64,000 nucleotides of DNA, taken from contig LSRY02000001.1 of assembly GCA_001643675.2 (NCBI GenBank), positions 62,001 through 126,000 on the forward strand, in the 5' to 3' direction. Positions 11,301 through 26,977 of the stretch are shown piece by piece. Position 1 is the first letter of the stretch; the number at the start of each line of letters is the position of its first letter. A program made the translations under genes and the position numbers. The notes under the pieces were generated by a model, which was not told the origin of the DNA, made no database searches, and worked only from the letters and a program-made list of their open reading frames with translations. The DNA comes from Monocercomonoides exilis PA203 (Eukaryota > Protista > Preaxostyla).

Positions 11301-14300
11301 TCCGGAATAAAGAGTTCATCGAACAAAATGCAATCTATGGGATGGATGCTGGAGAGCACAAAGAGGAGGCGATGGACTTGATGAGTCTGATTGTGAAATA
11401 CCAATCAGACACGATTGTTGTGTCGAGCAAAGAAGGGAAAGGAGGGAGGAATGAACAGCAATGTGGAAAGCCTTTGCTTCCTTGTGCAACAATTGGGTTT
11501 GGGCTGAGGCATCTGACACATGATTTCTTCAGCCAGGTGTTTGTCGATGAAGAATCTGTAATTGATGAGGAAATTGGATTGGACACGCTCACATTGAGTG
11601 GGATGCATGAAGTTCAGAGTCGAGTGGTTGTGAAAGGGAGAATGAACTGTAGCAAAGAAATGATTGTGGAAACAAGTGGGCAGGTGTATGTGAGATGGAT
11701 TCAATTTTCATTTGAAGAAGTGGAATCAACACCGACTCCACTTCCAACGACTCATTCATCATTCATGAAGATTTGTTCGGGGAAGACGTCGATCAGCATG
11801 TGTTCGTTTGAGGGAGTGAGCTCGGCCGGGGAGGAAATGGCAGAAGTGCCATTCTGCCTGATATTTGTGGAGAGAGGGAAATGCTCAATGGGGAATGTGA
11901 GTGTTATGTGGCTTTCATTTTTGAGTGAAGCAGTGATGGTGATGGAAGAGGATTGTGAAGTGAGTGGGATGGCACTGAGAAATGTTGAGGGAAGCAAAGA
12001 CTGTTTGAAGATCGGTGGAGGTGGGAGTGTGAAGATGGAAAAAGTGGAAGCAGGAAATGTGAGGATGGAAGACGGATGGGTCATAAGAGCAAATGGAAAG
12101 GAAGAAGGGAGACACAACAGAGAGGAAGGAGAGTTTTCATTTTCGATTTTGTCATCTTCATTTGAGAACATCACGTGTGTGGATGAGCGTGCAGGAGCAA
12201 TTGAAGTGGAGGGGATGGAAGGAAATGCAGAGTTTTCGAACTGCTCTTTTTGTGGGTGTTCATCGAGAAGAGAGAAGGGGAAGATGATTTCGCTTTTGGT
12301 GTGCAAAAGAATTCAGATGAGGCAGTGCTTGTTTGATGGGAAGGCAAATAAAAAGGATTTGAATGAGGAAGTGGTTGATGTGTGCAAATGGAATGGGTCA
12401 GTTGTTGAGGTGAAGGAGAGCGCGGGGGAGATGAAGGATACCAGTTTTGTGAGCTGTTCGGGTGGAGGTCTTTCTGTATGCGAAGGAAGGATGAAGATTG
12501 AAGATGGTAAGTTTGAGAACAACAATCCTTCGATTGAAAGATATCCATCTGCCAGACGAAACATTCTCTGTTCAGACACAGGACCATTGAATGTGATGAG
12601 TTTGAAAGGAGGAGACGGATGGGAAAGAAACACATCCTTGTGGATTCTGGATGAAGGATGTGAACTGGATGGGATTGTCTCTGAGAGAGCATCCACTCTG
12701 TTCGTTCCAGTTGTGGAAGAGGCGATGAATGAGACAACATCCGATGGTAGAACAAGCATCTCACTGACTGGGAAACTTCTTCTTCCATGCAATGTATCGC
12801 TTCGTTTGAGCTTCAGGAATGGAAAGGAAGAAGTGGTCGAGATCTATGGAATTGGTGAAAGGGAAAGTGTATCAGAGAAAGAGATGGTTGCTGTTGTTTC
12901 ATCTGCTCAGATGACAGCGGTGGGAGCTGAGACAGAAGTATCTGTGAGTCTTCTGTTTGGAAAGATTGATTCGCCATCATCAACAGAATCATTTATTCTG
13001 AAGAACAAAAGTGAAAGTCAGGCAAATGGAGATGAAAAACTTGTTGAAGGAGGAAAAGAAGGAAAATCTTATTGGTTGTTGATTGTGATTGTGCTTGTTG
13101 CGATATTATTTATCGTGTTAATTGGCTTTATTATTTTTGTTGTTCGATGGAGAAAGCAAAAGAGAAGAACTGAAGAACTGGAAGAGATTGTGAATGACAA
13201 CATCAAAAAGGATCCGAAGGCATTCGAGATGGTGACGATGGAGATGTCTCCCGAGGAGCAGTGGAGGAGGGCAGAGAGGGAGGCTGAGAAGAAGAATGAA
13301 GAGAGGTTCAAGAAGAGGGTGTATGAGAAAAGCTTGGGACACTCAGAGTCATCTGAGCATCTTCTTTCTGAGAGTGGTTCCACTGAATACATTCTGGGGA
13401 AAGATTCAGACAAGATCCCAGATTGGGCATTGGAAAAGGTTGAAGAAGAAGAGATTCGAAAGAGATCACCTTCACCATCCATTTCATCCACTTCAACAAC
13501 AGACTCAGATTCAACATTTGTTCGAAGGGAGGAATTGTGTCCAACCACCTCATCGATGTCGAATCTCGTGGATGCAATGGCATGCTCGTCTCCTCATGAG
13601 AAGCTGATTGTGGATCTGAGGGATTCGCTGTTCATGCTGCTGCACGGAAAGAATGAGAAGAAAGAGATGGCCATTGGGAGCTTGAAGGAAAGAGAGCAAA
13701 CAGCTGCTCAAATCCTGTTCTGGGTGGCTGGCGGCGCACTCTTCTCCTTCGAAGACGGGGAGGACGATCTTCCCTCTCTGCCAAACCTCAGCCCCCACAT
13801 CGTGCTGTTCTCCGAGCACATGGTCATCTGCATCGCCCTCCATTCAGATTTCTCTTCTGAAGACTCCGACACATCCTCCATCTCTTCTTCAACCGTTGTC
13901 ACATCTGCAAGCGATGATGATGATGATGGCAGAAACGATAGAGACTCTCTGCCCTCATCTGCATTTGAGGAAGAAGATAGCTTCAAAAAGAGTGTTTGAG
14001 GTGGAAGGCGCCTGAGCTCCTGATCAACAAGAAGATGGGGGCAACACAGAAGTCCGTGGCATTCTCCATCGGGATGATGCTGTGGGAGTGTGTGACGCTC
14101 CAGATCCCGTTTGGCGAGTACGAGGCCGAGACTGCCGGCCAGAAGATAGCAAATGGCGAAAAGCCAGATCTGGGCGCGGCAGGCTGCTCCGCCTTCGCCC
14201 AAACCATCAACGCCTGCCTTTCCCAAAATCCAGATGCCCGCCCCAGCCCTGCCCAGCTCCAGCGCCAGTTCATCCAGCACTTTCCCGGTGGCGCTCCCAG

Positions 14301-14418
14301 CCTCACAGCTTCCGATGCCCTCTATTGTTACTGCCCCTTGCACCTCAACTGCTCCTCCGATCAATCTGCCTCCTATTCCGCAACAACCTTCACCGAAGAT
14401 CCCGCTGCCCCCTCCTGA
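5373..14418 (+). CDS. Giant (~3000 aa) single-pass receptor-like protein: beta-helix/Cys-module ectodomain, TM helix, pseudokinase tail; two frameshifts in this sequence
   Basis: ORFs 5373-9362, 9278-13999 and 13996-14418 join by 1-nt frameshifts at ~9281 (restores a GD..CG....PC module) and 13985-13989 (A5 versus A6 in the intact paralogue). GG(G/A)(I/L/V) and FxxN repeats. TM is YWLLIVIVLVAILFIVLIGFIIFVV. Tail is RWKAPE..SIGMMLWE..CLSQNPDARP. May be a pseudogene or carry sequencing errors. Confidence 0.85.
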
Positions 14419-15520
14419 TCCTTCTCCGAGCAGCTGAACATGCCCTGTCTTTTTCCATCCAGCTCTCCCCCAGCCCTTCCACATCCCGATGACTGGCTTG
14501 GAAGCTAGCAAGCGAAAAAGTCACATCTGCAGCTCAAATAAAGCGGAAATGACGCAGGCAAGATAGATGCTCACAAATGACGATAGCGCAGACTGCATCT
14601 CATTCTGTGCCTCTTGTCAAACGTAACAGTTGTTTTATTAATTTATTAATTGTTTGTCTTTTTTTTGGGAATACTTCCATATGTTTTCTGTTATCTGTTT
14701 TCCGTTTTCATTTTGCCAGCTCCGATTTTGTTGTTATTATGAGGACCAGGCTCGCCAAGCTGCGGCCGTGTAGCTTTTTGCATCCTTCCATTTTGTGTTT
14801 GTTTGTTTGTTTGTTTTGTACTCGCTTTGTATTCGGCGTTTTTCTTCATTCACAGATGTTGTGGTTTTCAAGCCATTTTCATCCCCATTTCATTGTCCTG
14901 TTCCCACCCATGTGCGCTCTTCACATCACTTCCGTTGGCGCGCTCTCTCTCTCTCTAAAATAAACAAATCAGGGCATTTGCACTTCTAGATGGGAAAAAC
15001 TCACAAACAGGTGCCAAAAAGAAAAAAGCAAAAATTGCGTTTCTGTCACAATTCTCTGTCTTTCTGAGAAAAAGAAAAGCAAACGAATAAAATGCGAATT
15101 TTTCTATCAATAAAAACGATTGAGTGCACACCATTCTCTTCGGCCGAGAAAATGTCAAAGCGCTCGCTCAGCAAGAACACTCACTTTGTGTGCTTGCCCA
15201 GGAAGCAACACGAAAACGGAAACAGCACCAAACTCAATTTAGAAAGAGCCATGTTAGCCTTGCAACATAAAGAATAACAATATCACAAACAGATGCATCG
15301 GATGATTCACAAATGAAAAGAAAAGAAAAGAAAAAGCTTTAAAAAAATGAATGAATGAATGAATGAATGAATGAATGAAGAGGACAAAATCCAAATCACA
15401 CATCTAACCAACACTCAAAAAGCACAGATAACCCCACAGACATTTCAAAAACCGGTTTGATGGATAATTAGCAACAACAAAAAACAAAAAAGCAACTGTC
15501 ATAACAGAGCAAACCAGAAA
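12999..15520 (+). repeat. Left arm of a ~2.5 kb inverted repeat
   Basis: Reverse complement of 16927-19446. Near-identical from 12999 to ~15400 (identical ORF translations on opposite strands), diverged over the last ~120 bp. Confidence 0.95.
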
Positions 15521-16926
15521 AATCAATACACACATATTTGATAAATCAATAAAAAATAATTTTTGTTCTTCTGAAAATTCTCTTCAAAATGTTGAAATAT
15601 TGCTTGTTTATATGCTTCATGAAACCAGAAAGTGGAAATATCATTCTCACAAAAAAGTGTTAAAAAAAGTTTAAAATGAAAACAAACAGTTTCAGGCAAA
15701 ATGGACAATCAACGAAGCCTCTTCAAATGTAGTGCTTCATTCGGTTACATCTTTCTCGGATGAATTTCAATCTGCAAAATCAATATTATTTGGTGGGTTT
15801 ATTTCACAAAAATCTGTAGCAGAAGGAGCATCCACTGCGTTCATGTGAAAACATTCCATCACAAAGCATTTAATGCAAAATTATAGTTTTTTTGCACCAA
15901 TTATTTATTTTTCCAATTGGCTTTTTCCTCGTGAAAGATCGATTTTATCTGTTTCTCTTTTTTGCAACAAATTCGACAGATAAATTGACTTCACAGTTCT
16001 CCATTTTCCCCATATGGATTTTATAAGCAAAAACGATGTAATTGCTCAATTCCTCGTGGGTTTTGATTTGTAATTTAATCGATTTGAACGTATATCTTTC
16101 AACAAAGCTCATTTCATTTCTTCAATGAATAACTACTTTTTTGTCATTTTATTTGAACAACAAAATATGTACACTATTTATTGGCTCAACGTGAGTTAGT
16201 CGAAAGAATTTCTGGCTCAATCTCAAAATTCTTTTTTTGTTTTTTTGAATAAATGCTCCCATACTAAAAGCTGATTTTTAAGCAAATGAAAAAACAGCAA
16301 TATTCGAAGTGTCATTTGGAGATGCGCAACAAAAAATGAGAATCAATTGGTGAAAGCAAAAAGAAACAGGGAAAGGCGAAGAAAGCATGCTTTTGAAAAA
16401 CCAGAAAAGGAGGTGAAGCACATTATTGAAATTGAGCAATGGCTTGAAGCAAGCAGGACAAAACATTGGATAACGCTCCAATAAATGAAACAATTAGTAA
16501 TCGGAATAGCATCCAATGGAGTTATTCAAAAAATGAAGAACAAAGGGAAAAAGAAGAAAAACAAGGATGGATGAAAGAATGACTGAAAAGGCAAGACAAA
16601 AAGAAATTGAAAATTTTCCCAGTGATTTTCACACACCCTCATTAAATGTGTGAGTGCTTAAAGGAGAGCGGAAAAAGAAGTTGATTGAAGAAAACAAAGA
16701 AGAAATTTCAGAAGCAAAAAGGTGAAGCGGGAAAGGAAATGGAAGGAGCGACTGGAAATAAAGATACTACGAAAAGATAACTGAGTAGAATTAGATGGAA
16801 CCAAAAACAATATTGATTCACTTTTTAAGATTCAATTTGCATATTATTAATTCATTTTGCAAACAAGGAGCGAAAAGAAAAGGATTTATACGCAATAAAG
16901 ACATTAATAACGACTAATTATTTGTA

Positions 16927-19446
16927 TTTTCTGGTTTGTTCTGTCGTAGCAATTGGTTGTTTGTTTTTTGTTGTTGATTGTTTGATTTGTTTGTTTTTGA
17001 AATGTCAGTGGGAGTATTTGTGCTTTTTGAGTGTTGGCCAGACGTGTGATTTGGATTTTGTCCTCTTCATTCATTCATTCATTCATTCATCCATTCATTT
17101 TTTTAAAGCTTTTTCTTTTCTTTTCTTTTCATTTGTGAATCATCCGATGCATCTGTTTGTGATATTGTTATTCTTTATGTTGCAAGGCTAACATGGCTCT
17201 TTCTAAATTGAGTTTGGTGCTGTTTCCGTTTTCGTGTTGCTTCCTGGGCAAGCACACAAAGTGAGTGTTCTTGCTGAGCGAGCGCTTTGACATTTTCTCG
17301 GCCGAAGAGAATGGTGTGCACTCAATCGTTTTTATTGATAGAAAAATTCGCATTTTATTCGTTTGCTTTTCTTTTTCTCAGAAAGACAGAGAATTGTGAC
17401 AGAAACGCAATTTTTGCTTTTTTCTTTTTGGCACCTGTTTGTGAGTTTTTCCCATCTAGAAGTGCAAATGCCCTGATTTGTTTATTTTAGAGAGAGAGAG
17501 AGCGCGCCAACGGAAGTGATGTGAAGAGCGCACATGGGTGGGAACAGGACAATGAAATGGGGATGAAAATGGCTTGAAAACCACAACATCTGTGAATGAA
17601 GAAAAACGCCGAATACAAAGCGAGTACAAAACAAACAAACAAACAAACACAAAATGGAAGGATGCAAAAAGCTACACGGCCGCAGCTTGGCGAGCCTGGT
17701 CCTCATAATAACAACAAAATCGGAGCTGGCAAAATGAAAACGGAAAACAGATAACAGAAAACATATGGAAGTATTCCCAAAAAAAGACAAACAATTAATA
17801 AATTAATAAAACAACTGTTACGTTTGACAAGAGGCACAGAATGAGATGCAGTCTGCGCTATCGTCATTTGTGAGCATCTATCTTGCCTGCGTCATTTCCG
17901 CTTTATTTGAGCTGCAGATGTGACTTTTTCGCTTGCTAGCTTCCAAGCCAGTCATCGGGATGTGGAAGGGCTGGGGGAGAGCTGGATGGAAAAAGACAGG
18001 GCATGTTCAGCTGCTCGGAGAAGGATCAGGAGGGGGCAGCGGGATCTTCGGTGAAGGTTGTTGCGGAATAGGAGGCAGATTGATCGGAGGAGCAGTTGAG
18101 GTGCAAGGGGCAGTAACAATAGAGGGCATCGGAAGCTGTGAGGCTGGGAGCGCCACCGGGAAAGTGCTGGATGAACTGGCGCTGGAGCTGGGCAGGGCTG
18201 GGGCGGGCATCTGGATTTTGGGAAAGGCAGGCGTTGATGGTTTGGGCGAAGGCGGAGCAGCCTGCCGCGCCCAGATCTGGCTTTTCGCCATTTGCTATCT
18301 TCTGGCCGGCAGTCTCGGCCTCGTACTCGCCAAACGGGATCTGGAGCGTCACACACTCCCACAGCATCATCCCGATGGAGAATGCCACGGACTTCTGTGT
18401 TGCCCCCATCTTCTTGTTGATCAGGAGCTCAGGCGCCTTCCACCTCAAACACTCTTTTTTGAAGCTATCTTCTTCCTCAAATGCAGATGAGGGCAGAGAG
18501 TCTCTATCGTTTCTGCCATCATCATCATCATCGCTTGCAGATGTGACAACGGTTGAAGAAGAGATGGAGGATGTGTCGGAGTCTTCAGAAGAGAAATCTG
18601 AATGGAGGGCGATGCAGATGACCATGTGCTCGGAGAACAGCACGATGTGGGGGCTGAGGTTTGGCAGAGAGGGAAGATCGTCCTCCCCGTCTTCGAAGGA
18701 GAAGAGTGCGCCGCCAGCCACCCAGAACAGGATTTGAGCAGCTGTTTGCTCTCTTTCCTTCAAGCTCCCAATGGCCATCTCTTTCTTCTCATTCTTTCCG
18801 TGCAGCAGCATGAACAGCGAATCCCTCAGATCCACAATCAGCTTCTCATGAGGAGACGAGCATGCCATTGCATCCACGAGATTCGACATCGATGAGGTGG
18901 TTGGACACAATTCCTCCCTTCGAACAAATGTTGAATCTGAGTCTGTTGTTGAAGTGGATGAAATGGATGGTGAAGGTGATCTCTTTCGAATCTCTTCTTC
19001 TTCAACCTTTTCCAATGCCCAATCTGGGATCTTGTCTGAATCTTTCCCCAGAATGTATTCAGTGGAACCACTCTCAGAAAGAAGATGCTCAGATGACTCT
19101 GAGTGTCCCAAGCTTTTCTCATACACCCTCTTCTTGAACCTCTCTTCATTCTTCTTCTCAGCCTCCCTCTCTGCCCTCCTCCACTGCTCCTCGGGAGACA
19201 TCTCCATCGTCACCATCTCGAATGCCTTCGGATCCTTTTTGATGTTGTCATTCACAATCTCTTCCAGTTCTTCAGTTCTTCTCTTTTGCTTTCTCCATCG
19301 AACAACAAAAATAATAAAGCCAATTAACACGATAAATAATATCGCAACAAGCACAATCACAATCAACAACCAATAAGATTTTTCTTCTTTTCCCTCTTCA
19401 ACAAGTTTTTCATCTCCATTTGCCTGACTTTCACTTTTGTTCTTCA
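16927..19446 (-). repeat. Right arm of a ~2.5 kb inverted repeat
   Basis: Reverse complement of 12999-15520. Starts at codons KNKSESQANG of the 18026-26056 gene. Confidence 0.95.
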
Positions 19447-22400
19447 CAACAATGGCATCGGTGAAAGAAGGACTGGAGGGGTTGCCGAACTGCAGCGCAA
19501 CCAACACATCTGCCTTGTCAGATGCATCAGCTATTGCATTTGCTGGGATGGTGCTGGCGATCTCGTTCTCGCTCACATAATCGTCATGAGAGAAGAGGCC
19601 TTTCTCCACAGCGTGTTGATCGCCGAGGAGGAAGAAGAGGGCGTATGAGAGGTTGCAAGGGAGAAGGAGGGAGCCGTTGCAGCGGATCTGGATGTGGGTG
19701 TTGTTGTGATGGGTGATGGCAGCGCTGGTGAGTGTGGGGATGAAGAACGAGGATGCTCTTTGAGCAGGGATGCCGTGGAGCGAGCATGCGGTTGTGTGGA
19801 TCCAGAGGGAAGTGTTTGGAAGGAGGCCGTCTCCGCCGGCGATGCTTGTGAGATGGAGGGCGGAGGCATTTGAGCAGATGATGTTGCGGCGGGCAGACTG
19901 GTAGTTGGGGATGGATGGGGTGTTGTTTGCGAAGAGGATCTTGCGTATGTGCGCAGACGCGGCAGAAAGAGAGAGGGCGCCCTGAGGCGCAGCGGTGAAT
20001 GCAGCGTCTGTGATTGCGACTGATGAGTCGGCGAAATGGACAAGAGACCCGTTCCATGTGCACACGTTGTCTGCAACTTCTCTGGCTGTGTTGGCTGTGT
20101 TGGATGTGCTGGATGTGCATGAGGCAGCGGTACCTGTGCCTTGGAAGATGCATGCTTCGATCTGGATGTTTGCACAATTAGCAAAGCGCTCCATCGTTCC
20201 TGTTGCAGATGCAGATGCGAATGTGGGTGTGGAAGTGGAAGAGGAAGTGGAAGTGAAGTTGGTGAAAGAGCAGTTGTGCTGGAGGATGGTTCCTGTGCAC
20301 GAAGTGCAGTCAATGCCGCATCTCTTGGTTGTTGCATGGGCAACAGCCACCCCGACCAGCTTCAGCAGAGAGGCAGGTTCATCTGGAGAAGGCTGGGTGC
20401 CTGGGGTTTGGGGGCAGCCGCACGTGATGAATGCATTATCTGCTGTGGAGTTGTGTATGGCGAGATCTCTGATTTCGATGGTGGTGCTTGGCTCGATGGC
20501 AAGCGCGGCGTTGCTGGTGGCAGTGCTGCTGATGTTTGTTTCTGTGCACACTGCAACAGCTGAGCTGCAGAAGAGGAGGAGATTGCGAGTTGTGGCGATT
20601 GAATGGAGGGAGGCTTTCCTCATCTCGAACACCCCGCTTGCCACAGAGATGAGTGTGGAGTTGAGGAGAGCTTCAGTTCCGGCAGATGTGAATGTGCATG
20701 AAACGACGAGCAAGCTGCCGTTGAGCTGGCGAAAGACAGAGTCGAGCTCGGACGCGAAGCCGGAGCTAATGGAGAAGTGGCAGCTGTCGAGCGAGCAATC
20801 GTTTGCAAAAGCGACGACAGCGTGGTGGGTTTGCTCGATTGCGATTGGAGTCTGGAGATGGACCAGGCAGATCAGCTTTGTTGCTGAGCGGAGGGTGAGG
20901 TCGGCGAGTGTTGTCTGGCGGGCGAAGGCAGAATCGGTGTGGACAACGACCATGTTCCAAGTGCCGCTGTCGATGTGGCGGATGCTGTTGTCGATGGTTC
21001 TGCACATGTTTGAGGTGGAGCCGCACTGGCGCGAGTCAGTTCCGAGGAGGCAGGCGTGGATCTGGCCGGCCTTGAAGAAGGTGATGAGCGGGATGAGATC
21101 GAGAAGGGTGCTGTCGGTGAATGTGGAGCCGCAGATGGAGTTGTTTGTCTGGAGAGAGGGCTGGGTGAAGTCGAGTGTGAATTGGGTTTCGTTGATCTGT
21201 GTGGCGACGTGGTCGGACCGGATGAAGATGTCTTTGCCGGCAAAGGCGTCGTTCAAGATGAAGCGGTCGTTGAGGATGCGGAGCGGGATGGGGTGGAGGA
21301 GGTCATCAGGAGCTGGGGGTGAAGATTGAGAATAAGATTGAGAATGGGATTGGGGCTGGGTGCAGTCGATCATGAGAGCACCGCCTTTGCCCTTTGTGCG
21401 CGAGCACACACACTGAGTGAGCACACACGAAGCCACTTTCAGAGAGGATTCGGTGGAGCTGAGGCACACACGCACCGCGCCTCCTTCGTCGATGGTTTCT
21501 CCCACGCAGTTTGTGCAGAAGCAGGAGTCGAGCACACAGTCGATGCTCTGATACGAAGGGAGGGCAAAGACAGTTGAGTGATTGGCGCGGGCAGTGATGT
21601 TTGTGAAGTTGGAGTCTGCGATTGTGAAGGTCAACTGGCTGTTTGTGGGGCTGTATGTCTGCTTGGATGCGTCTTCAGCGGGTGCAGCGACCTCGATTAT
21701 CCCTGCTGGCGAGGCATCCACCATGCAGGCGGACAAGTTCTGCACAGCTGCTTGGGATGCGGTTGCAGCGACAAGGAAAAAGGGATGGGCGAGAGTGATT
21801 GCAGAGACGCAGCAGTTGGCGATGTCGGCTGATCCGGCAAGCACAGACACAACAGCATAGCTGGTTGGAGAGGAAGGGGCTGTGGATGCAAAGGAGCAGG
21901 CAGAGAGGGAGAGGCGGGCAGATGATGTGGCGGTTTGGAGAAAAGAGAGGATGCTGTGAAGCGAGGGTGGAAGAGAGAAGGAGAGGTTGGCGAGGCGGAG
22001 GAGGATGGAGGAGGCGAGGAAGGCTTTGTTGCTGCCTTGAAGGGCTGGCTCGTGCACTGCGACTGGTGTGCCATGGAGGTTGCCATTTATTAGGAGTTGT
22101 GGATTGTGGTGTGTAGCAGAAGGCTGGAGGTGGAGGAGGATGGAGAAGGTGGTGCTGTGTGTGACTGTGATTGTGGAGGCAGAGGATGGAAGGTCGGGGA
22201 CAAACCGGAGCTGGAGAGCCTTGTCGATGGATCTGCAAGGTGCGACGTCAAAGCCGCAAGCGCTGAAGTCCCATCCATCTGTGCCGTCGACATAGGCATG
22301 GGCAGAGAAGTTGGTCCAGAGGTACACAACGAGCGGCACAGCATAGTGCTCGCCGCATGTTGCTCTTTCCCAGCCGTTGAGCTGGTGCAGCGACTGGAAG

Positions 22401-25400
22401 GCTGGCCCGTCCATGTCCCATTTCAGGTGGAGCGTGTCGGCCACGCTGTCCAGCATCTGTCCGGCAACAAACAGGCTTTTCCCTCTCCAGGCGCGGCACT
22501 CGTCGAAGGTCATGTTTTGGAGCACAAAATCCATCGAGCCTTCGCCTCCCTCGATGAACATTCCACCCCCAAGCCCTCTTTCTTCGGTGTCCTCGTTTTC
22601 TGCATCGACTTCTTCATCGGCCTCAGTCTCAGCATCGGAATTGGTATCTGCCTCGGGCGCGGAGCTCAATGCTGAACACTGTGTGAATGTGACTCCAGTC
22701 ATGGTGAGCTTCCTGCCGTTCTCCACAGATGCATACAGACCGCCGCCTTTGAGGGTGTGTGCGCGGATGCAGCAGGATGATATGGTGCAATTGGACAGGT
22801 GCATTGTTGTGCCTTGCTGGGTGTGCTTTTCCGCGATCAGGCACCCGCCGTCTCCATTTGCCCGTCTCGGCCGTGCTATTATGGTGCTGTTGATGGTGAT
22901 GCTGTGTGCGCCCGATATCAGGATCGGGGTGAAGGTGCTGAACTCGGCGTGTGTGCTGATTTGTGTGTTGGTGATGGTTGCGCTTCCCGATGCAAGGCGC
23001 ATGATGTAGAAGATGACTGGGTGGGATGGAGCACTGTGAAAGTCTATGCAGCAATGGTCGAGCGTGAAGGCTGCAAGCGAGTGGATGAAGCCGTGTCGGC
23101 CGGTGCTCATGGCAGTGGGGAGCAAAAAGCAGATGCTGGATGCGCTCATCTCAGCGGAAGCAGTGACAATGGCTTTGTTTGAGCACTGGCCTGCATCATG
23201 CACGTGCACAGCCTGGAGATGTGCTGTTGCAGAGGAGAGCAGGAAGGGGAGTGTTTCGATTGTGATCTCGGAAGCGAGCGTGGAGTTTGCAGCAAGAAGA
23301 ATGGTGGTGGATGCAGAGGTGATTCTGTTGGATGCTGCGAAGTGGACGGTCTCGCAGGCAAACACAGATGGGCCGCAGTGCAAATGATCTGTCCCGGCGA
23401 GTCCGTCGACATAGATGTTGTTGTCGTGGTGGCAGAGATATATCTCGAGCGGGATGGCAGGCTGGTCTGCACCGTCCTCAGAGCCGCTGAGTCTGGATGG
23501 ATCGGCAAAGCAATGGGTGTGGTCGACAAACTGAAGTGTGGTTGTGTTCACGATATCACTCAGCATCACTCTGCTTGTGCATCTGAGAAAGAGGTCTCTT
23601 CCAACCGCTGCTCTGTTTGGTGTGGAATTGGAGAAGCACACGCCGCTGCTTATCTGGAGGAGTGCTTTGGCGTTGTCGATATGCACCATCATCCCTCCGC
23701 CCTTTCCGCCCTTTCCACCCGTTCCTCCCGTTCCCTCTGTATCGGGCACACAGCAATCAGCGAAAGCAGCCGAGCCGTTCACAACCATCTCAGCGTCCTC
23801 GTCTGTCAGGTGCACACACACCCCTCCGCCGCACGAGCCATCCTGGCAGGCGGTGCAGCTGGAGAAAGATCCACCAGTGATGCACACTTGCGATCCAGCG
23901 ATGAGGGAGCATTCGAGGCCGCTTCCGCTTCCGCTTTGCCGGGTGATGGCTGTCAGGTTTGTGGAAGTGAGTGTGACGCTCAGTGCAGCCTCGGCATTCA
24001 CAGTCAGGGCAGCCACAGATGAAAGGCACATAGGGCCAATTTCCGCCGAATCGAACAGCACATGCCCTGCAGCCACAGTTATGATGGATGCAGCGAATGG
24101 TGCATCGGGCAGTGTTTCTGCTGCAGTGATTGTGCAGTGGGCGACTTCGAGGCATCCCTGCATGTCTGTCAGGTGGAACAGGTGGGAGTGCAGCGAGGCG
24201 CTTGCATTCCTGCGGAATGCGAGGGAGCTGAAAGTGGCACTGCCAGTTGTGATTTGCACGAGGGCTGTGCTGTCTGTGGCGTCAGCACTCAGCACTGTTT
24301 TGTCAGCGCCAGCGCCGCTGAAGGATATGGTGAGTGTGCACACATCGATCCTTGTTTCGTGGCACACACACTCCTCGACTGCAACAGCCTTTGTTTGGAG
24401 CAGCGGGTTGGCCACGCCCACTGCATATCCCACGGTTCTGCATCTTCTGCCTTGGATGTCTCCTGCATCAGCCGATCCGCATGCTTGGTGGTCGATGCCG
24501 CTGAAACTGTTGACGAGGATGGGATCGAAGAAAGTGTTTGGAATCCAGGAGCTGCATTCTTGCATCCCCTTCACAACCCTGTTTGTGGAGCCAGCTGTTG
24601 CGGAGCGGCAGAGCACAAAGCACTCATCATTGATGTTTGTCCAACCGCTGTCGATATACACATCGTGACCCATTTTTGCAGCAGAATTGTTTTCAAAGAA
24701 GCAGAAGCTCACTTTGGAAACATATGCGTTGCTTGAATTGTCCCAACAAATTCCTCCTCCATGTTTCTCACTCGAACAGTTTCTGAAACAACAATCAGTC
24801 ATGTTAACTCTTCCATTGTCATATAATCCAAAACATCCTCCTTGATAATCTTGTGTTTTCTTTTTGCAACTCTCAAAAATGCATGAATCTGTCAACCCAG
24901 TATTTTCACAGTCATATGTTATCATTCCGCTTCCAACATGTCCAGTCGTACAATTTGTTGTGACAGTATTCCTGATCAAAAATGAATTTAGAGTGGACAT
25001 ATCAATTGCTCCTCCCGAATGAATTGCATTGCAGCTATTGAAAAAAGTATGTGTTGAAATCAAATTTTTTCCTCCATTGTTCAAGGAAATAGCACCTCCA
25101 CGAGATGAAGAATTGCAGTTATTGAACATGCAATGTGAGATACTCAGTACTCCCGAAGACGTGAAGTGAATGGCTCCACCAGGTGAACCTGTCAATGAAG
25201 AAAAGTGGCAATCAACGAACGTTGCATCACCTGTTGAAATGTTCTGTCTTAACATTGAATGATTGCCAACCACTGGCTGGGCATTATGGTGTCTGTGGCA
25301 GTTCTCAAAGGAAGTGTTTGCTGATGAGTGAGTGAAAGATTTGGAGTTCAGTGCATGGAACAAGCCTCCGTTGTATGGGGATTCGACACATTTCACGGTG

Positions 25401-26056
25401 CATCCAGACATCACTGTTCTGATTTCGCGGGTGGGGATATCGAGGGGCTCATTCATGTTTGTGGTGTGGGTGATGTTTGTGAAGCATGAATGCAGCAGCT
25501 CAACATCGGATATGCCAGATGTGGCGACAAACGGGGAGCCATCACAGACGCAGCAGGAGTCGAAGAGGGATGAGGATATTGAGACTCTGCAGCTCGCTGA
25601 GCTGGCCGGATGGTCAGCACCGCTGGCAATGGATGAAACAGGAACAGCTGGGTTAGAGACTGCCAGCGAGATGTTGAACAGCCACAGGGATGCACTTTGC
25701 AGCTGGGCAACATGGTGGGTTGATTTGGCGGTGTATGAGAGAGTGCAAGATGTGAATGTGGCATTGCTGCTGGTGATGGCAAGGCAGGCGTGTGGTGCAC
25801 AGCATGCAAGGGATGTGTCAGACAGCAGGAAAGAGGTGTTGGCCATTGTTGCACAGTGGCGGCTGAGCAGCTGAGTTTGTTTTGGCGCACTCAACAAACC
25901 CTTGAAAAGGCATTGCTGTTTGTTGTTGGATGTGCCAATGGACTTGTTATTGAAAGGCAAGTGTGCTTTGCATGGTGAATGTTCCGAGCAGTTGGCAGCG
26001 CCATTTGATTCGCATGCAATGAAGCACAAAAACAAGAAAGTCAAATGGCACTTCAT
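18026..26056 (-). CDS. Giant (~2680 aa) single-pass receptor-like protein with beta-helix ectodomain and pseudokinase tail, intact
   Basis: Uninterrupted ORF 18026-26119. Likely start MKCHLTFLFLCFIACESNG (signal peptide-like, ATG 26056). GGAI/FxxN repeats, four G.D...CG....C modules, TM helix, kinase subdomain VIII-XI-like C-terminus. Confidence 0.92.
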   Translation of the reverse strand: MKCHLTFLFLCFIACESNGAANCSEHSPCKAHLPFNNKSIGTSNNKQQCLFKGLLSAPKQTQLLSRHCATMANTSFLLSDTSLACCAPHACLAITSSNATFTSCTLSYTAKSTHHVAQLQSASLWLFNISLAVSNPAVPVSSIASGADHPASSASCRVSISSSLFDSCCVCDGSPFVATSGISDVELLHSCFTNITHTTNMNEPLDIPTREIRTVMSGCTVKCVESPYNGGLFHALNSKSFTHSSANTSFENCHRHHNAQPVVGNHSMLRQNISTGDATFVDCHFSSLTGSPGGAIHFTSSGVLSISHCMFNNCNSSSRGGAISLNNGGKNLISTHTFFNSCNAIHSGGAIDMSTLNSFLIRNTVTTNCTTGHVGSGMITYDCENTGLTDSCIFESCKKKTQDYQGGCFGLYDNGRVNMTDCCFRNCSSEKHGGGICWDNSSNAYVSKVSFCFFENNSAAKMGHDVYIDSGWTNINDECFVLCRSATAGSTNRVVKGMQECSSWIPNTFFDPILVNSFSGIDHQACGSADAGDIQGRRCRTVGYAVGVANPLLQTKAVAVEECVCHETRIDVCTLTISFSGAGADKTVLSADATDSTALVQITTGSATFSSLAFRRNASASLHSHLFHLTDMQGCLEVAHCTITAAETLPDAPFAASIITVAAGHVLFDSAEIGPMCLSSVAALTVNAEAALSVTLTSTNLTAITRQSGSGSGLECSLIAGSQVCITGGSFSSCTACQDGSCGGGVCVHLTDEDAEMVVNGSAAFADCCVPDTEGTGGTGGKGGKGGGMMVHIDNAKALLQISSGVCFSNSTPNRAAVGRDLFLRCTSRVMLSDIVNTTTLQFVDHTHCFADPSRLSGSEDGADQPAIPLEIYLCHHDNNIYVDGLAGTDHLHCGPSVFACETVHFAASNRITSASTTILLAANSTLASEITIETLPFLLSSATAHLQAVHVHDAGQCSNKAIVTASAEMSASSICFLLPTAMSTGRHGFIHSLAAFTLDHCCIDFHSAPSHPVIFYIMRLASGSATITNTQISTHAEFSTFTPILISGAHSITINSTIIARPRRANGDGGCLIAEKHTQQGTTMHLSNCTISSCCIRAHTLKGGGLYASVENGRKLTMTGVTFTQCSALSSAPEADTNSDAETEADEEVDAENEDTEERGLGGGMFIEGGEGSMDFVLQNMTFDECRAWRGKSLFVAGQMLDSVADTLHLKWDMDGPAFQSLHQLNGWERATCGEHYAVPLVVYLWTNFSAHAYVDGTDGWDFSACGFDVAPCRSIDKALQLRFVPDLPSSASTITVTHSTTFSILLHLQPSATHHNPQLLINGNLHGTPVAVHEPALQGSNKAFLASSILLRLANLSFSLPPSLHSILSFLQTATSSARLSLSACSFASTAPSSPTSYAVVSVLAGSADIANCCVSAITLAHPFFLVAATASQAAVQNLSACMVDASPAGIIEVAAPAEDASKQTYSPTNSQLTFTIADSNFTNITARANHSTVFALPSYQSIDCVLDSCFCTNCVGETIDEGGAVRVCLSSTESSLKVASCVLTQCVCSRTKGKGGALMIDCTQPQSHSQSYSQSSPPAPDDLLHPIPLRILNDRFILNDAFAGKDIFIRSDHVATQINETQFTLDFTQPSLQTNNSICGSTFTDSTLLDLIPLITFFKAGQIHACLLGTDSRQCGSTSNMCRTIDNSIRHIDSGTWNMVVVHTDSAFARQTTLADLTLRSATKLICLVHLQTPIAIEQTHHAVVAFANDCSLDSCHFSISSGFASELDSVFRQLNGSLLVVSCTFTSAGTEALLNSTLISVASGVFEMRKASLHSIATTRNLLLFCSSAVAVCTETNISSTATSNAALAIEPSTTIEIRDLAIHNSTADNAFITCGCPQTPGTQPSPDEPASLLKLVGVAVAHATTKRCGIDCTSCTGTILQHNCSFTNFTSTSSSTSTPTFASASATGTMERFANCANIQIEACIFQGTGTAASCTSSTSNTANTAREVADNVCTWNGSLVHFADSSVAITDAAFTAAPQGALSLSAASAHIRKILFANNTPSIPNYQSARRNIICSNASALHLTSIAGGDGLLPNTSLWIHTTACSLHGIPAQRASSFFIPTLTSAAITHHNNTHIQIRCNGSLLLPCNLSYALFFLLGDQHAVEKGLFSHDDYVSENEIASTIPANAIADASDKADVLVALQFGNPSSPSFTDAIVVKNKSESQANGDEKLVEEGKEEKSYWLLIVIVLVAILFIVLIGFIIFVVRWRKQKRRTEELEEIVNDNIKKDPKAFEMVTMEMSPEEQWRRAEREAEKKNEERFKKRVYEKSLGHSESSEHLLSESGSTEYILGKDSDKIPDWALEKVEEEEIRKRSPSPSISSTSTTDSDSTFVRREELCPTTSSMSNLVDAMACSSPHEKLIVDLRDSLFMLLHGKNEKKEMAIGSLKEREQTAAQILFWVAGGALFSFEDGEDDLPSLPNLSPHIVLFSEHMVICIALHSDFSSEDSDTSSISSSTVVTSASDDDDDGRNDRDSLPSSAFEEEDSFKKECLRWKAPELLINKKMGATQKSVAFSIGMMLWECVTLQIPFGEYEAETAGQKIANGEKPDLGAAGCSAFAQTINACLSQNPDARPSPAQLQRQFIQHFPGGAPSLTASDALYCYCPLHLNCSSDQSASYSATTFTEDPAAPS

Positions 26057-26977
26057 GGATGCTTTCAGCATGGTGACACATAATTTTTTTTTTTGAATTT
26101 GATTTGTCAGAAAGTCCAAATTATGAGTTTTGTTTTTCTTTGAATGGGTCTTCGAGATAATGTCTTGGCAAATTTTATGTGCTTTTTAACTTTTGTTAAT
26201 TGCTGTTCTTTTACTTCGATGAACAACGAAAATTGTGTGATTGTTGCAATCATAACGAATATATATGATTTGAGCAATTGTGATGATTGTGAATCTCAAT
26301 AATTTAATTTTCATGAAAAATGTTTGATTTCATCCAGCTTCGTAATCATCTTTCTCTTTCTTTTCAAACGCAAAATCAAACAAATATCAAAAAAGTTGGC
26401 ATTGATGTTGTTATAATTCTCACTTTGACTTTCATTTTGCAGAAATATTATTCAGATAGAGAAAGACAATCCGAACTCTTAATTTTGCACCAAAAACAAG
26501 GAAAAGTCATTAACGTTTCAGATTGAAACAATTCATAAATTTTTCGTTATAGGAAAGTCTTTTAAAGAAGTAAATAAATTTTGAAAAAGTTATTAATTTT
26601 CGAATTAAAGGTCTATGATCAAAAGAACTTTATTGCAAGATCTGAAGAGGAAAAAATAGTCAAATAATATTTCAATCAAATACGATCTTCCATGATAAAG
26701 AAGAAACGAGGAATAGGTTTTTCGAATGTTTTCAAGAGTTTGCCGAAATGGACTGGCCTTGAATCGAAAATTCAAACAAAATCAGAAAGGTTACAGAATA
26801 TACAAATATTTTTGATGTCAAACATATAGAAAAAAATACATCAATATTTTAGAATACCATTTTTTCCGAAAATGAAACAACCAATTAATATTGTCATGCA
26901 GATTCTATTATATTGTTGTATTGAAATTTGACTGAAACAGATTCATTTGCCGATAGATATTTCTTATCCATCAATAT

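What the first reader, a model, noticed from the sequence alone, without database searches (positions are those of the whole stretch)
24710..25280. Compositionally foreign beta-helix segment inside the ectodomain, between conserved anchors
Seen: in the minus-strand gene, ~570 bp encoding the GGAIHF/GGAISL/GGAIDM/GGCFGL/GGGICW repeats is visibly more AT-rich, and C>G on the + strand. Both flanks are GC-rich and G>C. The anchors FENCHRHHN and VSFCFFENNSA..GHDV match FECCSRLKN and ISFCFFTGNKA..GHDV in the other gene, where the intervening ~6110-6715 is also AT-rich and different. Inference: a membrane-distal variable module exchanged more recently than the scaffold, i.e. cassette-type diversification loosely analogous to segmental antigenic variation.
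Basis: partly seen in the sequence, partly recalled or inferred. Interest (0 to 1): 0.8.

Follow-up and report, generated by a model that had tools for sequence, protein, structure and literature searches.

The report
Old variable tip in homogenised receptors
In the gut protist Monocercomonoides exilis, giant surface-receptor genes that are otherwise almost identical copies differ sharply in about 600 bases encoding the outer tip. That tip is an old, patch-swapped part with the genome's normal base make-up, not a recent foreign insert, which is a familiar way for surface-gene families to evolve.

Summary
At 24710-25280, inside a 2,681-aa minus-strand gene (gene B), GC falls from about 0.56 to 0.35-0.39. 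GC3 falls from about 0.60-0.65 to 0.25-0.32 while GC2 stays flat, so the shift is at synonymous sites.

The segment has the window's ordinary composition. The scaffold, with C3 near 0.50, is the odd part.

Four paralogues are 95-100% identical to gene B over about 8 kb but only 55-62% identical in this segment. Synonymous divergence (dS) is 0.35-1.4 there against 0.02-0.08 in the flanks, with the same dN/dS of 0.2-0.4. Even the nearest pairs are older in the segment than in their flanks.

Gene B is a mosaic: like L009 up to aa 323, like L007 for aa 324-458, then like L009 again (p about 1e-23). Five subfamilies show the same dip.

The segment forms the middle rungs of a right-handed beta-helix at the N-terminal end of the ectodomain. 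Gene B's own version is transcribed. I found no silent donor, no switching and no excess of amino-acid change.

The family is the published "tyrosine kinase" expansion, whose ectodomain is undescribed. This scan has already reported the same mosaic receptor tips on other DNA of this genome.

The parts
18026..26071 (-). Gene B. It encodes a 2,681-aa type-I membrane protein: a hydrophobic N-terminal signal-like stretch, an ectodomain of about 2,200 aa, one TM helix, and a cytoplasmic tail with a kinase C-lobe.
   Evidence: ORF listing and translation. Pfam PF07714 scores 34.3 bits against a cutoff of 23.1. The closest named relative is M. exilis MONOS_9931fu9932.
25103..25309 (-). Left part of the variable region (aa 255-323, including anchor FENCHRHHN and GGAIHF). 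Its nearest relative is the L009/L010 type (80-100% in 15-codon windows), against 64-91% to L007.
   Evidence: Fine sliding windows and block dS. Breakpoint after aa 323.
24698..25102 (-). Right part and core of the variable region (aa 324-458, holding GGAISL, GGAIDM, GGCFGL and GGGICW). Its nearest relative is L007 (84-100%). Identity to the L009 type is 44-69% over most of the block (up to 89% in a short conserved patch at aa 424-443), with dS 1.39. GC3 is 0.25-0.33.
24659..24712 (-). Downstream anchor VSFCFFENNSAAKMGHDV (aa 454-471), which holds invariant family columns (C, F, F, N, G, D). All paralogues rejoin from about aa 459.
24539..25261 (-). Right-handed parallel beta-helix (aa 271-511; model residues 50-290 have pLDDT above 90). 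It has about 8 rungs, and the deepest divergence covers rungs 3-5.
   Evidence: AlphaFold2 model. VIA-align Z 19-20, rmsd 2.7-3.4 A over 210-225 residues to alginate lyases, phage tailspikes and the PfbA adhesin. Repeated 27-30% matches to a bacterial or archaeal PMP/Beta_helix repeat protein.
19454..24697 (-). Homogenised ectodomain scaffold (aa 459-2206), C3-rich (C3 0.50, G3 0.16, GC3 0.65). It is 93-100% identical among the five paralogues, with dS 0.02-0.07.
25310..26071 (-). Homogenised N-terminal flank (aa 1-254, GC3 0.59, dS 0.03-0.08).
26072..26240 (-). Probable 5' untranslated part of the transcript. RNA-library contigs run up to about 26240 and are nearly absent beyond it, whereas DNA runs continue.
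   Evidence: tables 2 and 8.
19301..19375 (-). Transmembrane helix (aa 2233-2257).
   Evidence: A 25-residue hydrophobic run followed by RWRKQKRR in the translation. Read from the sequence; no predictor was run.
18176..18466 (-). Kinase C-lobe, the only part of a kinase domain that Pfam recognises (profile positions 162-257 of 258). It is a possible pseudokinase.
   Evidence: That the catalytic motifs are missing is my reading by eye, not a test.
16927..19452 (-). Gene B arm of a 2.5-kb inverted repeat shared with gene A. It covers the last part of the ectodomain, the TM helix, the tail and about 1.1 kb of 3' flank.
   Evidence: blastn gives 98.5% over 2,532 columns, with only 7 differences in the first 2,360 or so.
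12993..15521 (+). Gene A arm of the same inverted repeat.
5373..13999 (+). Gene A, a distant family member convergent with gene B. It reads as two overlapping ORFs (5373-9362 and 9278-13999). Its scaffold is G3-rich and C3-poor.
6108..6716 (+). Homologous tip segment of gene A, between FECCSRLKN and ISFCFFTGNKA. Its GC3 is 0.28, with nearly the same third-position spectrum as gene B's segment. It is 92-98% identical to its one close paralogue (L043), so this pair shares one version.

Best explanation
The segment encodes the middle rungs of the N-terminal (presumably membrane-distal) beta-helix of a giant receptor-like protein. The protein belongs to the largest gene family of Monocercomonoides exilis.

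Within each subfamily, almost the whole gene-sized unit is kept near-identical by recurrent gene conversion between paralogues (concerted evolution). That unit runs from a few hundred bases upstream, through the CDS, to about 1.1 kb downstream.

The tip segment largely escapes this homogenisation, so old, deeply diverged versions persist there. Conversion tracts that enter it end at different points, and this produces patchwork tips. Gene B, for example, is L009-like up to aa 323 and L007-like for aa 324-458.

The AT-rich, unskewed synonymous composition of the tip is simply the genome's default. The C-rich scaffold composition belongs to the homogenised lineage and fades into the tip along the same gradient as identity.

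Shown: the different genealogies, the mosaic, the fold, transcription, and the recurrence in five subfamilies.

Inferred:
- that conversion, rather than repeated duplication, keeps the flanks alike;
- that the tip is kept diverse because it binds different ligands;
- why conversion stops there (selection against homogenised tips, or divergence itself blocking recombination).
For: - Identity profile. Paralogues are 95-100% identical over about 8 kb but 55-62% (41-47% at the amino-acid level) in aa 330-420.
- Divergence. dS is 0.35-1.4 in the segment against 0.02-0.08 in the flanks, with equal dN/dS.
- Nearest pairs. They too are 3-7 times older in the segment than in their flanks (p 1e-4 and 4e-4).
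- Deep against shallow distances. The distance from gene B to the sister gene on C28 is about the same in the segment (about 0.9) and in the C-flank (0.95). Within-subfamily distance differs about 20-fold (0.35-0.56 vs 0.015-0.04). The long-term rates are therefore equal and only the genealogy differs.
- Conservation between subfamilies. The beta-helix domain is the best conserved ectodomain part (42-59% aa against 14-38% elsewhere).
- Mosaic and incongruence tests.
- Gradients. Identity and GC3 fall in parallel over about 80 codons on each side. GC3 correlates with third-position identity (rho 0.45, p 1e-4).
- Same pattern in the B, C5, C18 and C19 subfamilies and in C8/C7.
- Extent of homology. 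It ends 20-640 bases upstream and about 1.1 kb downstream of the gene, so these are gene-sized units rather than large segmental duplications.
- Direct sign of recent conversion between very different family members: the 2.5-kb A/B tail inverted repeat.
- Fold.
- Transcription. Gene B's own tip is in RNA contigs with 0 mismatches, and there is almost no RNA upstream of about 26240.
Against: - No polarised evidence shows that conversion is what homogenises the flanks. Repeated recent duplication followed by tip replacement from lost donors gives a similar picture.
- GC-biased conversion cannot by itself explain the composition. The homogenised upstream non-coding DNA (89-99% identical) is still 23-31% GC. 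The scaffold bias is strand-asymmetric (C3 0.50 vs G3 0.16). Singleton changes imply an equilibrium GC near 0.45, not 0.57.
- dN/dS in the tip is not raised, so selection for diversity is not demonstrated.
- Only five close paralogues exist for gene B, and only about 3.7 kb was available for the other subfamilies.
- The AU rejection for the tip is marginal (p 0.036).
Confidence: 0.68

Rival explanations
1. The scaffolds are recent duplicates, and the tip was replaced afterwards by gene conversion from more divergent donor cassettes. The module would then be the more recently exchanged part.
For: - One short replacement (about 0.4 kb, aa 324-458, L007-like) in an L009-like gene is more parsimonious for gene B than two long flanking conversions.
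- Truncated head-only open frames exist elsewhere in the genome. About 19 of the 149 module hits lie in frames under 1,300 aa, for example L041 at 575 aa.
- Earlier notes of this scan describe arrays of such copies (I did not check them).
Against: - The L007-like tract in gene B is older (dS 0.224) than the B-L007 flanks (0.065), and far older than the B-L009 flanks (0.020).
- No copy closer than 87% exists in the assembly.
- Every B-type tip (53% aa identity or more) lies in a full-length frame, except the sister gene on C28 (53% aa), whose frame is broken in two.
- The truncated copies are at most 36% identical to gene B's tip, too far for homologous exchange.
- Tip sequences of the subfamily form one clade (98*), so nothing was imported from other subfamilies.
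Confidence: 0.17
2. The tip undergoes local, AT-biased hypermutation. A targeted mutagenic process would raise both dS and dN and drive the segment AT-rich.
For: dN/dS is equal while dS is 4-15 times higher in four subfamilies. GC3 is low in every subfamily.
Against: - Between subfamilies the tip is no more diverged than the flanks: tree stems are equal or shorter and amino-acid identity is higher.
- The within/between distance ratio differs 40-100-fold between tip and flank, which a rate multiplier cannot produce.
- The sharp parental switches need recombination.
- The tip's composition equals that of ordinary genes here.
Confidence: 0.06
3. This is a programmed, antigenic-variation-like switching system. 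One expressed gene would be rewritten at high frequency during growth from a cassette archive.
For: The architecture fits: a variable block between invariant anchors, with mosaics. The family is large, and cut-down head copies exist elsewhere (notes).
Against: - No joints or alternative tips appear at this locus in contigs of DNA runs from 2016 and 2022.
- The tip has 0 mismatches in DNA and RNA contigs. Tip-to-flank depth ratios are similar in DNA (about 0.3) and RNA (about 0.2-0.35), which suggests several paralogues are expressed together. Contigs hide rare variants, so this is weak.
- There is no silent donor for this subfamily.
- The exchanges seen are old (dS 0.14 or more).
Confidence: 0.05
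4. The pattern is an assembly or polishing artefact. Multi-copy flanks would have been artificially homogenised by short-read polishing of a nanopore assembly.
For: The assembly is ONT-based, and the family overlaps 'unclassified repeats' (PMC8767320). A homopolymer-length difference (A5 vs A6) separates the gene A and gene B tails.
Against: - Polishing cannot erase 30-45% divergence.
- The flanks still carry 2-7% paralogue-specific differences.
- Independent short-read contigs reproduce the tip exactly, and they show paralogue variants in the flanks.
- The same pattern holds at 25 or more loci.
Confidence: 0.02

Closest known systems
M. exilis 'protein tyrosine kinase' / tyrosine-kinase-like expansion (Karnkowska et al. 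2019, PMC6759080; Treitli et al. 2021, PMC8767320)
   Same: This is the same family. It is the largest gene family of the genome (332 predicted members, 320 of them TKL) and overlaps 'unclassified repeats'. Gene B's tail hits PF07714, and its nearest named relatives are MONOS_ proteins with PF07714.
   Different: The papers count kinases only. In the text I searched, they say nothing about the roughly 2,200-aa beta-helix ectodomain, the variable tip, concerted evolution or composition.
Chlamydial polymorphic membrane proteins (Pmp; Pfam PF02415) and the Pmp-like and BspA-like surface families of Trichomonas vaginalis (from my own knowledge of the literature)
   Same: Both have repeated GGA(I/L/V)-type rungs in a right-handed parallel beta-helix, form a large paralogous surface family, and are thought to act as adhesins or ligand binders.
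   Different: Gene B scores 11.3 bits for PF02415, against a cutoff of 20.6. The second motif here is F-x-x-C rather than FxxN. The protein is anchored by a single TM helix with a kinase-like tail, not by an autotransporter barrel.
Entamoeba histolytica transmembrane kinases (TMK family; from my own knowledge)
   Same: Both are an expanded family of type-I receptor kinases or pseudokinases with variable Cys-rich ectodomains in an anaerobic gut protist.
   Different: TMK ectodomains are CXXC-rich and not beta-helical. I know of no report there of a homogenised scaffold with a variable island.
Segmental gene-conversion antigen systems: Anaplasma msp2/p44, Borrelia vlsE, Neisseria pilE/pilS, trypanosome VSG mosaics (from my own knowledge)
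   Same: All have a central variable block between conserved anchors, with mosaics of short tracts from relatives.
   Different: Those systems use one expression site plus silent donors and switch within an infection. Here the partners are full-length transcribed paralogues, the exchanges are old, and no switching is seen.
MHC class I/II genes, where the peptide-binding exon keeps ancient lineages while neighbouring introns and exons are homogenised by recombination (from my own knowledge)
   Same: It shows the same genealogical signature: an island of deep coalescence inside recently homogenised flanks, with patchwork motifs.
   Different: In MHC the pattern involves alleles at one locus under balancing selection with raised dN/dS. 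Here it involves paralogues, and dN/dS is 0.2-0.4.

Membership tests
M. exilis TKL / 'protein tyrosine kinase' receptor family | Protein kinase domain recognised above the Pfam threshold | tested here: met
   PF07714 E 2e-8, 34.3 bits against a cutoff of 23.1. Only profile positions 162-257 (the C-lobe) match.
M. exilis TKL / 'protein tyrosine kinase' receptor family | Closest named relatives are annotated M. exilis proteins carrying PF07714 | tested here: met
   P0001-P0004 are MONOS_ proteins of 2,417-2,755 aa, E 8e-133 to 1e-38.
M. exilis TKL / 'protein tyrosine kinase' receptor family | Intact catalytic motifs (active kinase) | tested here: inconclusive
   No N-lobe was detected by Pfam. 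By eye, HRD and DFG are not evident in the translation. No profile alignment was made.
Chlamydia-type PMP repeat proteins (PF02415) | PF02415 above the gathering score | tested here: not met
   Gene B: E 0.49, 11.3 bits against 20.6. Thirteen of 27 family tips give weak hits, best E 0.0036.
Chlamydia-type PMP repeat proteins (PF02415) | Repeated GGA(I/L/V) and FxxN motifs | tested here: inconclusive
   GGAI occurs three times, plus GGCF and GGGI. The partner motif reads F-x-x-C (FENC, FNNC, FNSC, FRNC), not FxxN.
Chlamydia-type PMP repeat proteins (PF02415) | Autotransporter beta-barrel at the C-terminus | tested here: not met
   There is a single TM helix and a cytoplasmic kinase-like tail instead.
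Right-handed parallel beta-helix fold | Stacked three-strand rungs superposable on solved beta-helices | tested here: met
   Model residues 50-290 have pLDDT above 90. Z 19-20, rmsd 2.7-3.4 A, 210-225 residues aligned. Foldseek alone was weak (E 0.019 or more), but all its hits were beta-helices.
Cassette-type antigenic variation (msp2 / vlsE / pilE-like) | Variable block between conserved anchors with mosaic tracts | tested here: met
Cassette-type antigenic variation (msp2 / vlsE / pilE-like) | Silent, truncated donor copies closely related to the expressed variable block | tested here: not met
   For gene B's subfamily every copy is in a full-length frame, except the broken sister gene on C28, and the best is 87% identical. 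The truncated head-only frames elsewhere are at most 36% identical.
Cassette-type antigenic variation (msp2 / vlsE / pilE-like) | Switching within cell lineages on a short time scale | tested here: inconclusive
   No joints or alternative tips appear in contigs of DNA runs from 2016 and 2022 or in the RNA runs. Contigs drop rare variants, and raw reads were not available.
Concerted evolution with a conversion-cold island (MHC-like signature) | Synonymous divergence of the island far above that of the flanks for the same gene pairs | tested here: met
   dS 0.35-1.4 vs 0.02-0.08. The nearest pairs are 3-7 times higher, p 1e-4 and 4e-4.
Concerted evolution with a conversion-cold island (MHC-like signature) | Excess of amino-acid change (dN/dS above the flanks, or above 1) in the island | tested here: not met
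   Median dN/dS is 0.18-0.40 in the island and 0.24-0.72 in the flanks. Site-wise models were not run.

The most novel reading that the evidence does not exclude
The variable beta-helix tip might be the target of a dedicated or at least favoured diversification process. In that reading, conversion tracts drawn from a genome-wide pool (full-length paralogues plus the truncated head-only copies noted elsewhere in this genome) continually reshuffle tip rungs. This would give a free-living-style gut protist a large, evolving repertoire of receptors for bacteria or host surfaces. It would function like an innate recognition repertoire, and possibly switch somatically.
Probability: 0.1. Interest if true: 0.85.

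Novelty: new member of a known kind. Interest (0 to 1): 0.5.

Why it matters
The largest gene family of the only known eukaryote without mitochondria has so far been counted only as 'kinases'. These results show that its members are giant beta-helix surface receptors. They evolve in concert, except for one tip segment that keeps old, reshuffled variants.

This gives a concrete candidate for the ligand-binding site and a defined region to compare between strains. It is also a clean natural example of two things. A compositional boundary can mark a genealogical boundary inside one gene. And a 'foreign-looking' AT-rich patch can be the native part while the rest of the gene is the outlier.

It does not reveal a new mechanism.

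Tried and rejected
- GC-biased gene conversion as the full cause of the GC-rich scaffold. There is a correlation (rho 0.45; 0.33 without the tip). But homogenised non-coding DNA upstream stays at 23-31% GC, the bias is strand-asymmetric, and singleton changes imply an equilibrium GC near 0.45. I keep it only as a partial possibility.
- Do breakpoints sit on the GG(A/C/G)(I/F) rung motifs? The four distinct breakpoints (aa 295-308, 323/324, 420-422) all lie within about 8 residues of a motif. With a 27-residue rung, that is expected by chance.
- Foldseek against the PDB gave no hit at E 0.001 or better. The full VIA-align scan was needed.
- Pfam on the whole ectodomains of genes A and B gave nothing at E 0.1 or better.
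The other subfamilies were therefore analysed only on the roughly 3.7-kb loci around the tip.
- A literature search for Monocercomonoides plus 'polymorphic membrane protein' returned 0 papers.
- Large segmental duplication as the source of flank identity is rejected, because homology stops at gene-sized boundaries.
Full report
WHAT IS THERE

The window comes from contig 1 of an 82.3-Mb, 101-contig assembly. The closest named proteins are Monocercomonoides exilis MONOS_ proteins on a contig of the same length. The size and contig number match the published nanopore assembly (PMC8767320).

The finding lies in a minus-strand ORF (18026..26119, first Met at 26071). It encodes a 2,681-aa protein with these parts:
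- a hydrophobic N-terminus;
- a Cys-rich ectodomain of about 2,200 aa;
- one TM helix (aa 2233-2257);
- a tail in which Pfam recognises only the C-lobe of a Tyr/Ser-Thr kinase.

I call this gene B. A second, very divergent family member, gene A (5373-13999, + strand), converges on it. The family is the 'protein tyrosine kinase/TKL' expansion reported as the largest gene family of this organism (332 genes; PMC6759080). It overlaps 'unclassified repeats' in the assembly paper. In the passages I retrieved by term search, neither paper mentions the ectodomain. A search for Monocercomonoides with 'polymorphic membrane protein' found nothing.

CHECK OF THE OBSERVATION

Every element is present at the stated coordinates.
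- The five GG-motifs lie between FENCHRHHN (25283-25309) and VSFCFFENNSAAKMGHDV (24659-24712).
- GC drops to 0.35-0.40, and the + strand skew turns negative.
- The drop is at synonymous sites: GC3 0.59-0.65 in the flanks against 0.32 overall and 0.25 in the core, with GC2 constant.
- Gene A has the matching anchors and a matching AT-rich stretch at 6108-6716 (GC3 0.28).

THE COMPOSITION IS NATIVE, NOT FOREIGN

The segment's GC (0.389) equals the window mean (0.392). Its GC3 lies within the range of four unrelated ORFs in the window (0.28-0.43).

The tips of genes A and B have almost the same third-position spectrum (A3 0.29/0.33, C3 0.18/0.14, G3 0.14/0.13, T3 0.39/0.39). Their scaffolds are skewed in opposite directions: gene B has C3 0.50 and G3 0.16, while gene A has G3 0.29-0.35 and C3 0.10-0.12.

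The module is present in at least 149 places in the genome (1,331 first-look candidates). Nearly all of these lie in open frames of 2,400-4,100 aa. The scaffold is therefore the compositional outlier.

THE SEGMENT HAS A DIFFERENT AND OLDER HISTORY THAN ITS FLANKS

Gene B has four close paralogues:
- L007 at C1:442.6-452.5 kb;
- L008 at C1:181.8-191.7 kb;
- L009 on C73;
- L010 at C1:5.6-15.5 kb.

A codon alignment shows 95-100% nucleotide identity over about 8 kb. In aa 330-420 identity is only 55-62% (41-47% at the amino-acid level).

Nei-Gojobori estimates:

| Region | dS | dN/dS |
|---|---|---|
| Tip segment | 0.35-1.4 | 0.24-0.41 |
| Flanks | 0.02-0.08 | 0.31-0.57 |

The same holds in three more subfamilies (tip dS 4-15 times that of the flank, dN/dS 0.18-0.40). 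The dip in identity and GC3 also appears in a fifth.

Even the closest pair in each half of the tip is older there than in its own flanks. B-L007 has dS 0.224 against 0.065 (Fisher p 1e-4). B-L009 has 0.142 against 0.020 (p 4e-4).

NOT HYPERMUTATION

In maximum-likelihood trees of 27 family members, the distance from gene B to its sister gene on C28 is about the same in the tip (about 0.9) as in the C-flank (0.95). Distances within the subfamily differ about 20-fold.

Between subfamilies, the beta-helix domain is the best conserved part of the ectodomain, at 42-59% amino-acid identity at its edges and 27-36% in its core. The N-flank is at 14-29% and the downstream scaffold at 30-38%.

Long-term rates are therefore equal or lower in the tip. 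Only the within-subfamily genealogy differs, which points to homogenised flanks rather than a fast-mutating tip.

MOSAIC STRUCTURE

- Gene B resembles the L009/L010 type up to aa 323 (33 of 35 informative sites).
- It resembles L007 from aa 324 to about 458 (144 of 158).
- The switch is supported by a permutation p of 0.0005 or less and Fisher p 1e-23.
- L008 rejoins B/L007 at about aa 414, and L009 at about aa 459.
- The C-flank tree joins gene B with the L009/L010 type (100/100) and rejects B+L007 (AU p 1.4e-16). The N-flank rejects it at p 0.002.
- The right half of the tip joins B+L007 and rejects B+L009-type at p 0.036.
- Clean parental switches also occur in the C18 and C5 subfamilies.
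- Tips never cross subfamily limits: each subfamily is a clade in the tip tree, and gene B's has 98* support.

UNIT AND REACH OF HOMOGENISATION

Homology among the paralogues starts 20 to more than 636 bases upstream of the ATG. It ends about 1.1 kb after the stop. These are gene-sized units, not large segmental duplications.

Genes A and B, whose ectodomains are unalignable at the DNA level, share a 2.5-kb inverted repeat (12993-15521 / 19452-16927). It covers the TM helix, the tail and the 3' flank, with 7 differences in about 2,360 bases. In aa 2284-2460, gene B's tail differs from those of its own subfamily (dS 0.38-0.69, dN/dS 0.05-0.11). This is direct evidence of very recent conversion between neighbouring, otherwise distant family members.

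WHY THE COMPOSITIONS DIFFER IS NOT SETTLED

Identity and GC3 fall together over about 80 codons on each side of the tip. GC3 correlates with third-position identity along the whole gene (rho 0.45, p 1e-4). Composition therefore tracks ancestry: scaffold-lineage DNA is C3-rich and tip-lineage DNA is default.

GC-biased conversion alone does not fit, for three reasons:
1. Homogenised upstream non-coding DNA is still 23-31% GC.
2. The bias is strand-asymmetric.
3. Singleton changes in the scaffold imply an equilibrium GC near 0.45 with no C-over-G asymmetry.

FOLD AND LIKELY ROLE

An AlphaFold2 model of aa 222-560, built on 27 family tips, has pLDDT above 90 for aa 271-511 and shows stacked three-strand rungs.
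- Foldseek hits were weak but were all beta-helices.
- The exhaustive structural scan gave Z 19-20 (rmsd 2.7-3.4 A, 210-225 residues) to alginate lyases, tailspikes, the PfbA adhesin and an autotransporter passenger.
- Sequence searches link the tip to bacterial or archaeal surface proteins carrying Beta_helix and Chlam_PMP repeats (E 3e-15). The Pfam PMP model itself stays below threshold.

The deepest divergence covers rungs 3-5 of about 8. Invariant columns are Gly, Ala, Ile, Phe, Cys and Trp of the rung motifs.

That the tip binds ligands, and that its diversity is functional, is inference from position, fold and analogy. The average dN/dS does not show positive selection.

EXPRESSION AND STABILITY

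Public runs hold the region. In two metatranscriptome runs, contigs with 0 mismatches cover 24674-25136 (X2) and 24764-25015 (X5). Coverage stops near 26240, although DNA runs continue. This argues for a real transcript.

DNA runs of 2016 and 2022 from one sample carry the same tip, and no joints were seen. Tip-to-flank word depth is about 0.3 in DNA and 0.2-0.35 in RNA. That is what several co-expressed paralogues sharing flanks would give. All of this is at contig level, so rare variants would be missed.

RELATION TO EARLIER NOTES OF THIS SCAN

Other agents reported the same kind of mosaic beta-helix receptor tips on other pieces of this genome, and also arrays of truncated head-only copies. 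My data agree on the mosaic tips.

For gene B's subfamily I found no truncated or silent close copy. Truncated frames do exist among distant members (for example L041, 575 aa).

VERDICT

The segment is a real, recombining variable module. But it is the native and older part of the gene, inside a scaffold kept uniform by concerted evolution.

It is a new, undescribed example of a well-known mode of surface-gene family evolution. No dedicated mechanism is shown.

Noticed in passing
window 12993-15521 (+) and 16927-19452 (-): Convergent genes A and B end in a 2.5-kb inverted repeat covering the TM helix, cytoplasmic tail and 3' flank. It has only 7 differences in the first 2,360 or so bases, around a 1.4-kb spacer. 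The two ectodomains are otherwise unalignable at the DNA level, so this points to very recent conversion between neighbours.
   Followed up: partly
window 9278-9362 and 13986: Gene A is broken. Two overlapping ORFs imply a frameshift near 9278-9362. A run of A5 at 13986, where gene B has A6, ends gene A before the kinase C-lobe. Either gene A is a pseudogene or these are homopolymer errors of the nanopore assembly.
   Followed up: partly
window 5373-13999 vs 18026-26071: Homologous scaffolds have opposite third-position skews on their coding strands: gene A has G3 0.29-0.35 and C3 0.10-0.12, while gene B has C3 0.50 and G3 0.16. Amino-acid compositions match the skews (Gly/Glu/Val/Lys-rich vs Ala/Ser/Thr/Leu-rich). 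Both give G>C on the + strand here, but gene B's paralogues L007 and L008 lie in the other orientation with the same sequence. The skew therefore belongs to the gene lineage, not to the chromosome strand.
   Followed up: partly
window 18691-19221 (gene B aa 2284-2460): The cytoplasmic juxtamembrane part is a second island of old divergence among gene B's paralogues (dS 0.38-0.69). It is under strong constraint (dN/dS 0.05-0.11), and in gene B it is identical to gene A's.
   Followed up: partly
L009 (G000:C73:5000-14900) and L010 (G000:C1:5600-15500): These two copies are 100% identical over most of the gene. They differ in the first 100 or so codons, and L010 has a truncated, divergent tail. 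This may be a haplotig or a contig-end (subtelomeric?) duplication.
   Followed up: no
L011 / L017 (G000:C28:245300-255200): The nearest outgroup of gene B's subfamily (53% aa identity in the tip) is split into two open frames of 1,421 and 1,301 aa. It is probably a broken gene.
   Followed up: no
L041 (G000:C58:1483609-1487259); other short frames: About 19 of the 149 module hits lie in open frames under 1,300 aa. L041, for example, is a 575-aa head-only frame. These truncated tip-bearing copies are all at most 36% identical to gene B's tip.
   Followed up: partly
window 22493-22753 (gene B aa 1106-1193): An acidic low-complexity stretch (Asp/Glu/Thr/Ala-rich) with indels is the only other place in the ectodomain where identity among the paralogues drops, to 92-93%.
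   Followed up: no
window 18026-26071: A motif of the form C-G-x(5-6)-C-x-T/S-I/V recurs at aa 899, 1272 and 1683. This suggests the ectodomain is a chain of several beta-helix units, of which only the first is variable.
   Followed up: no
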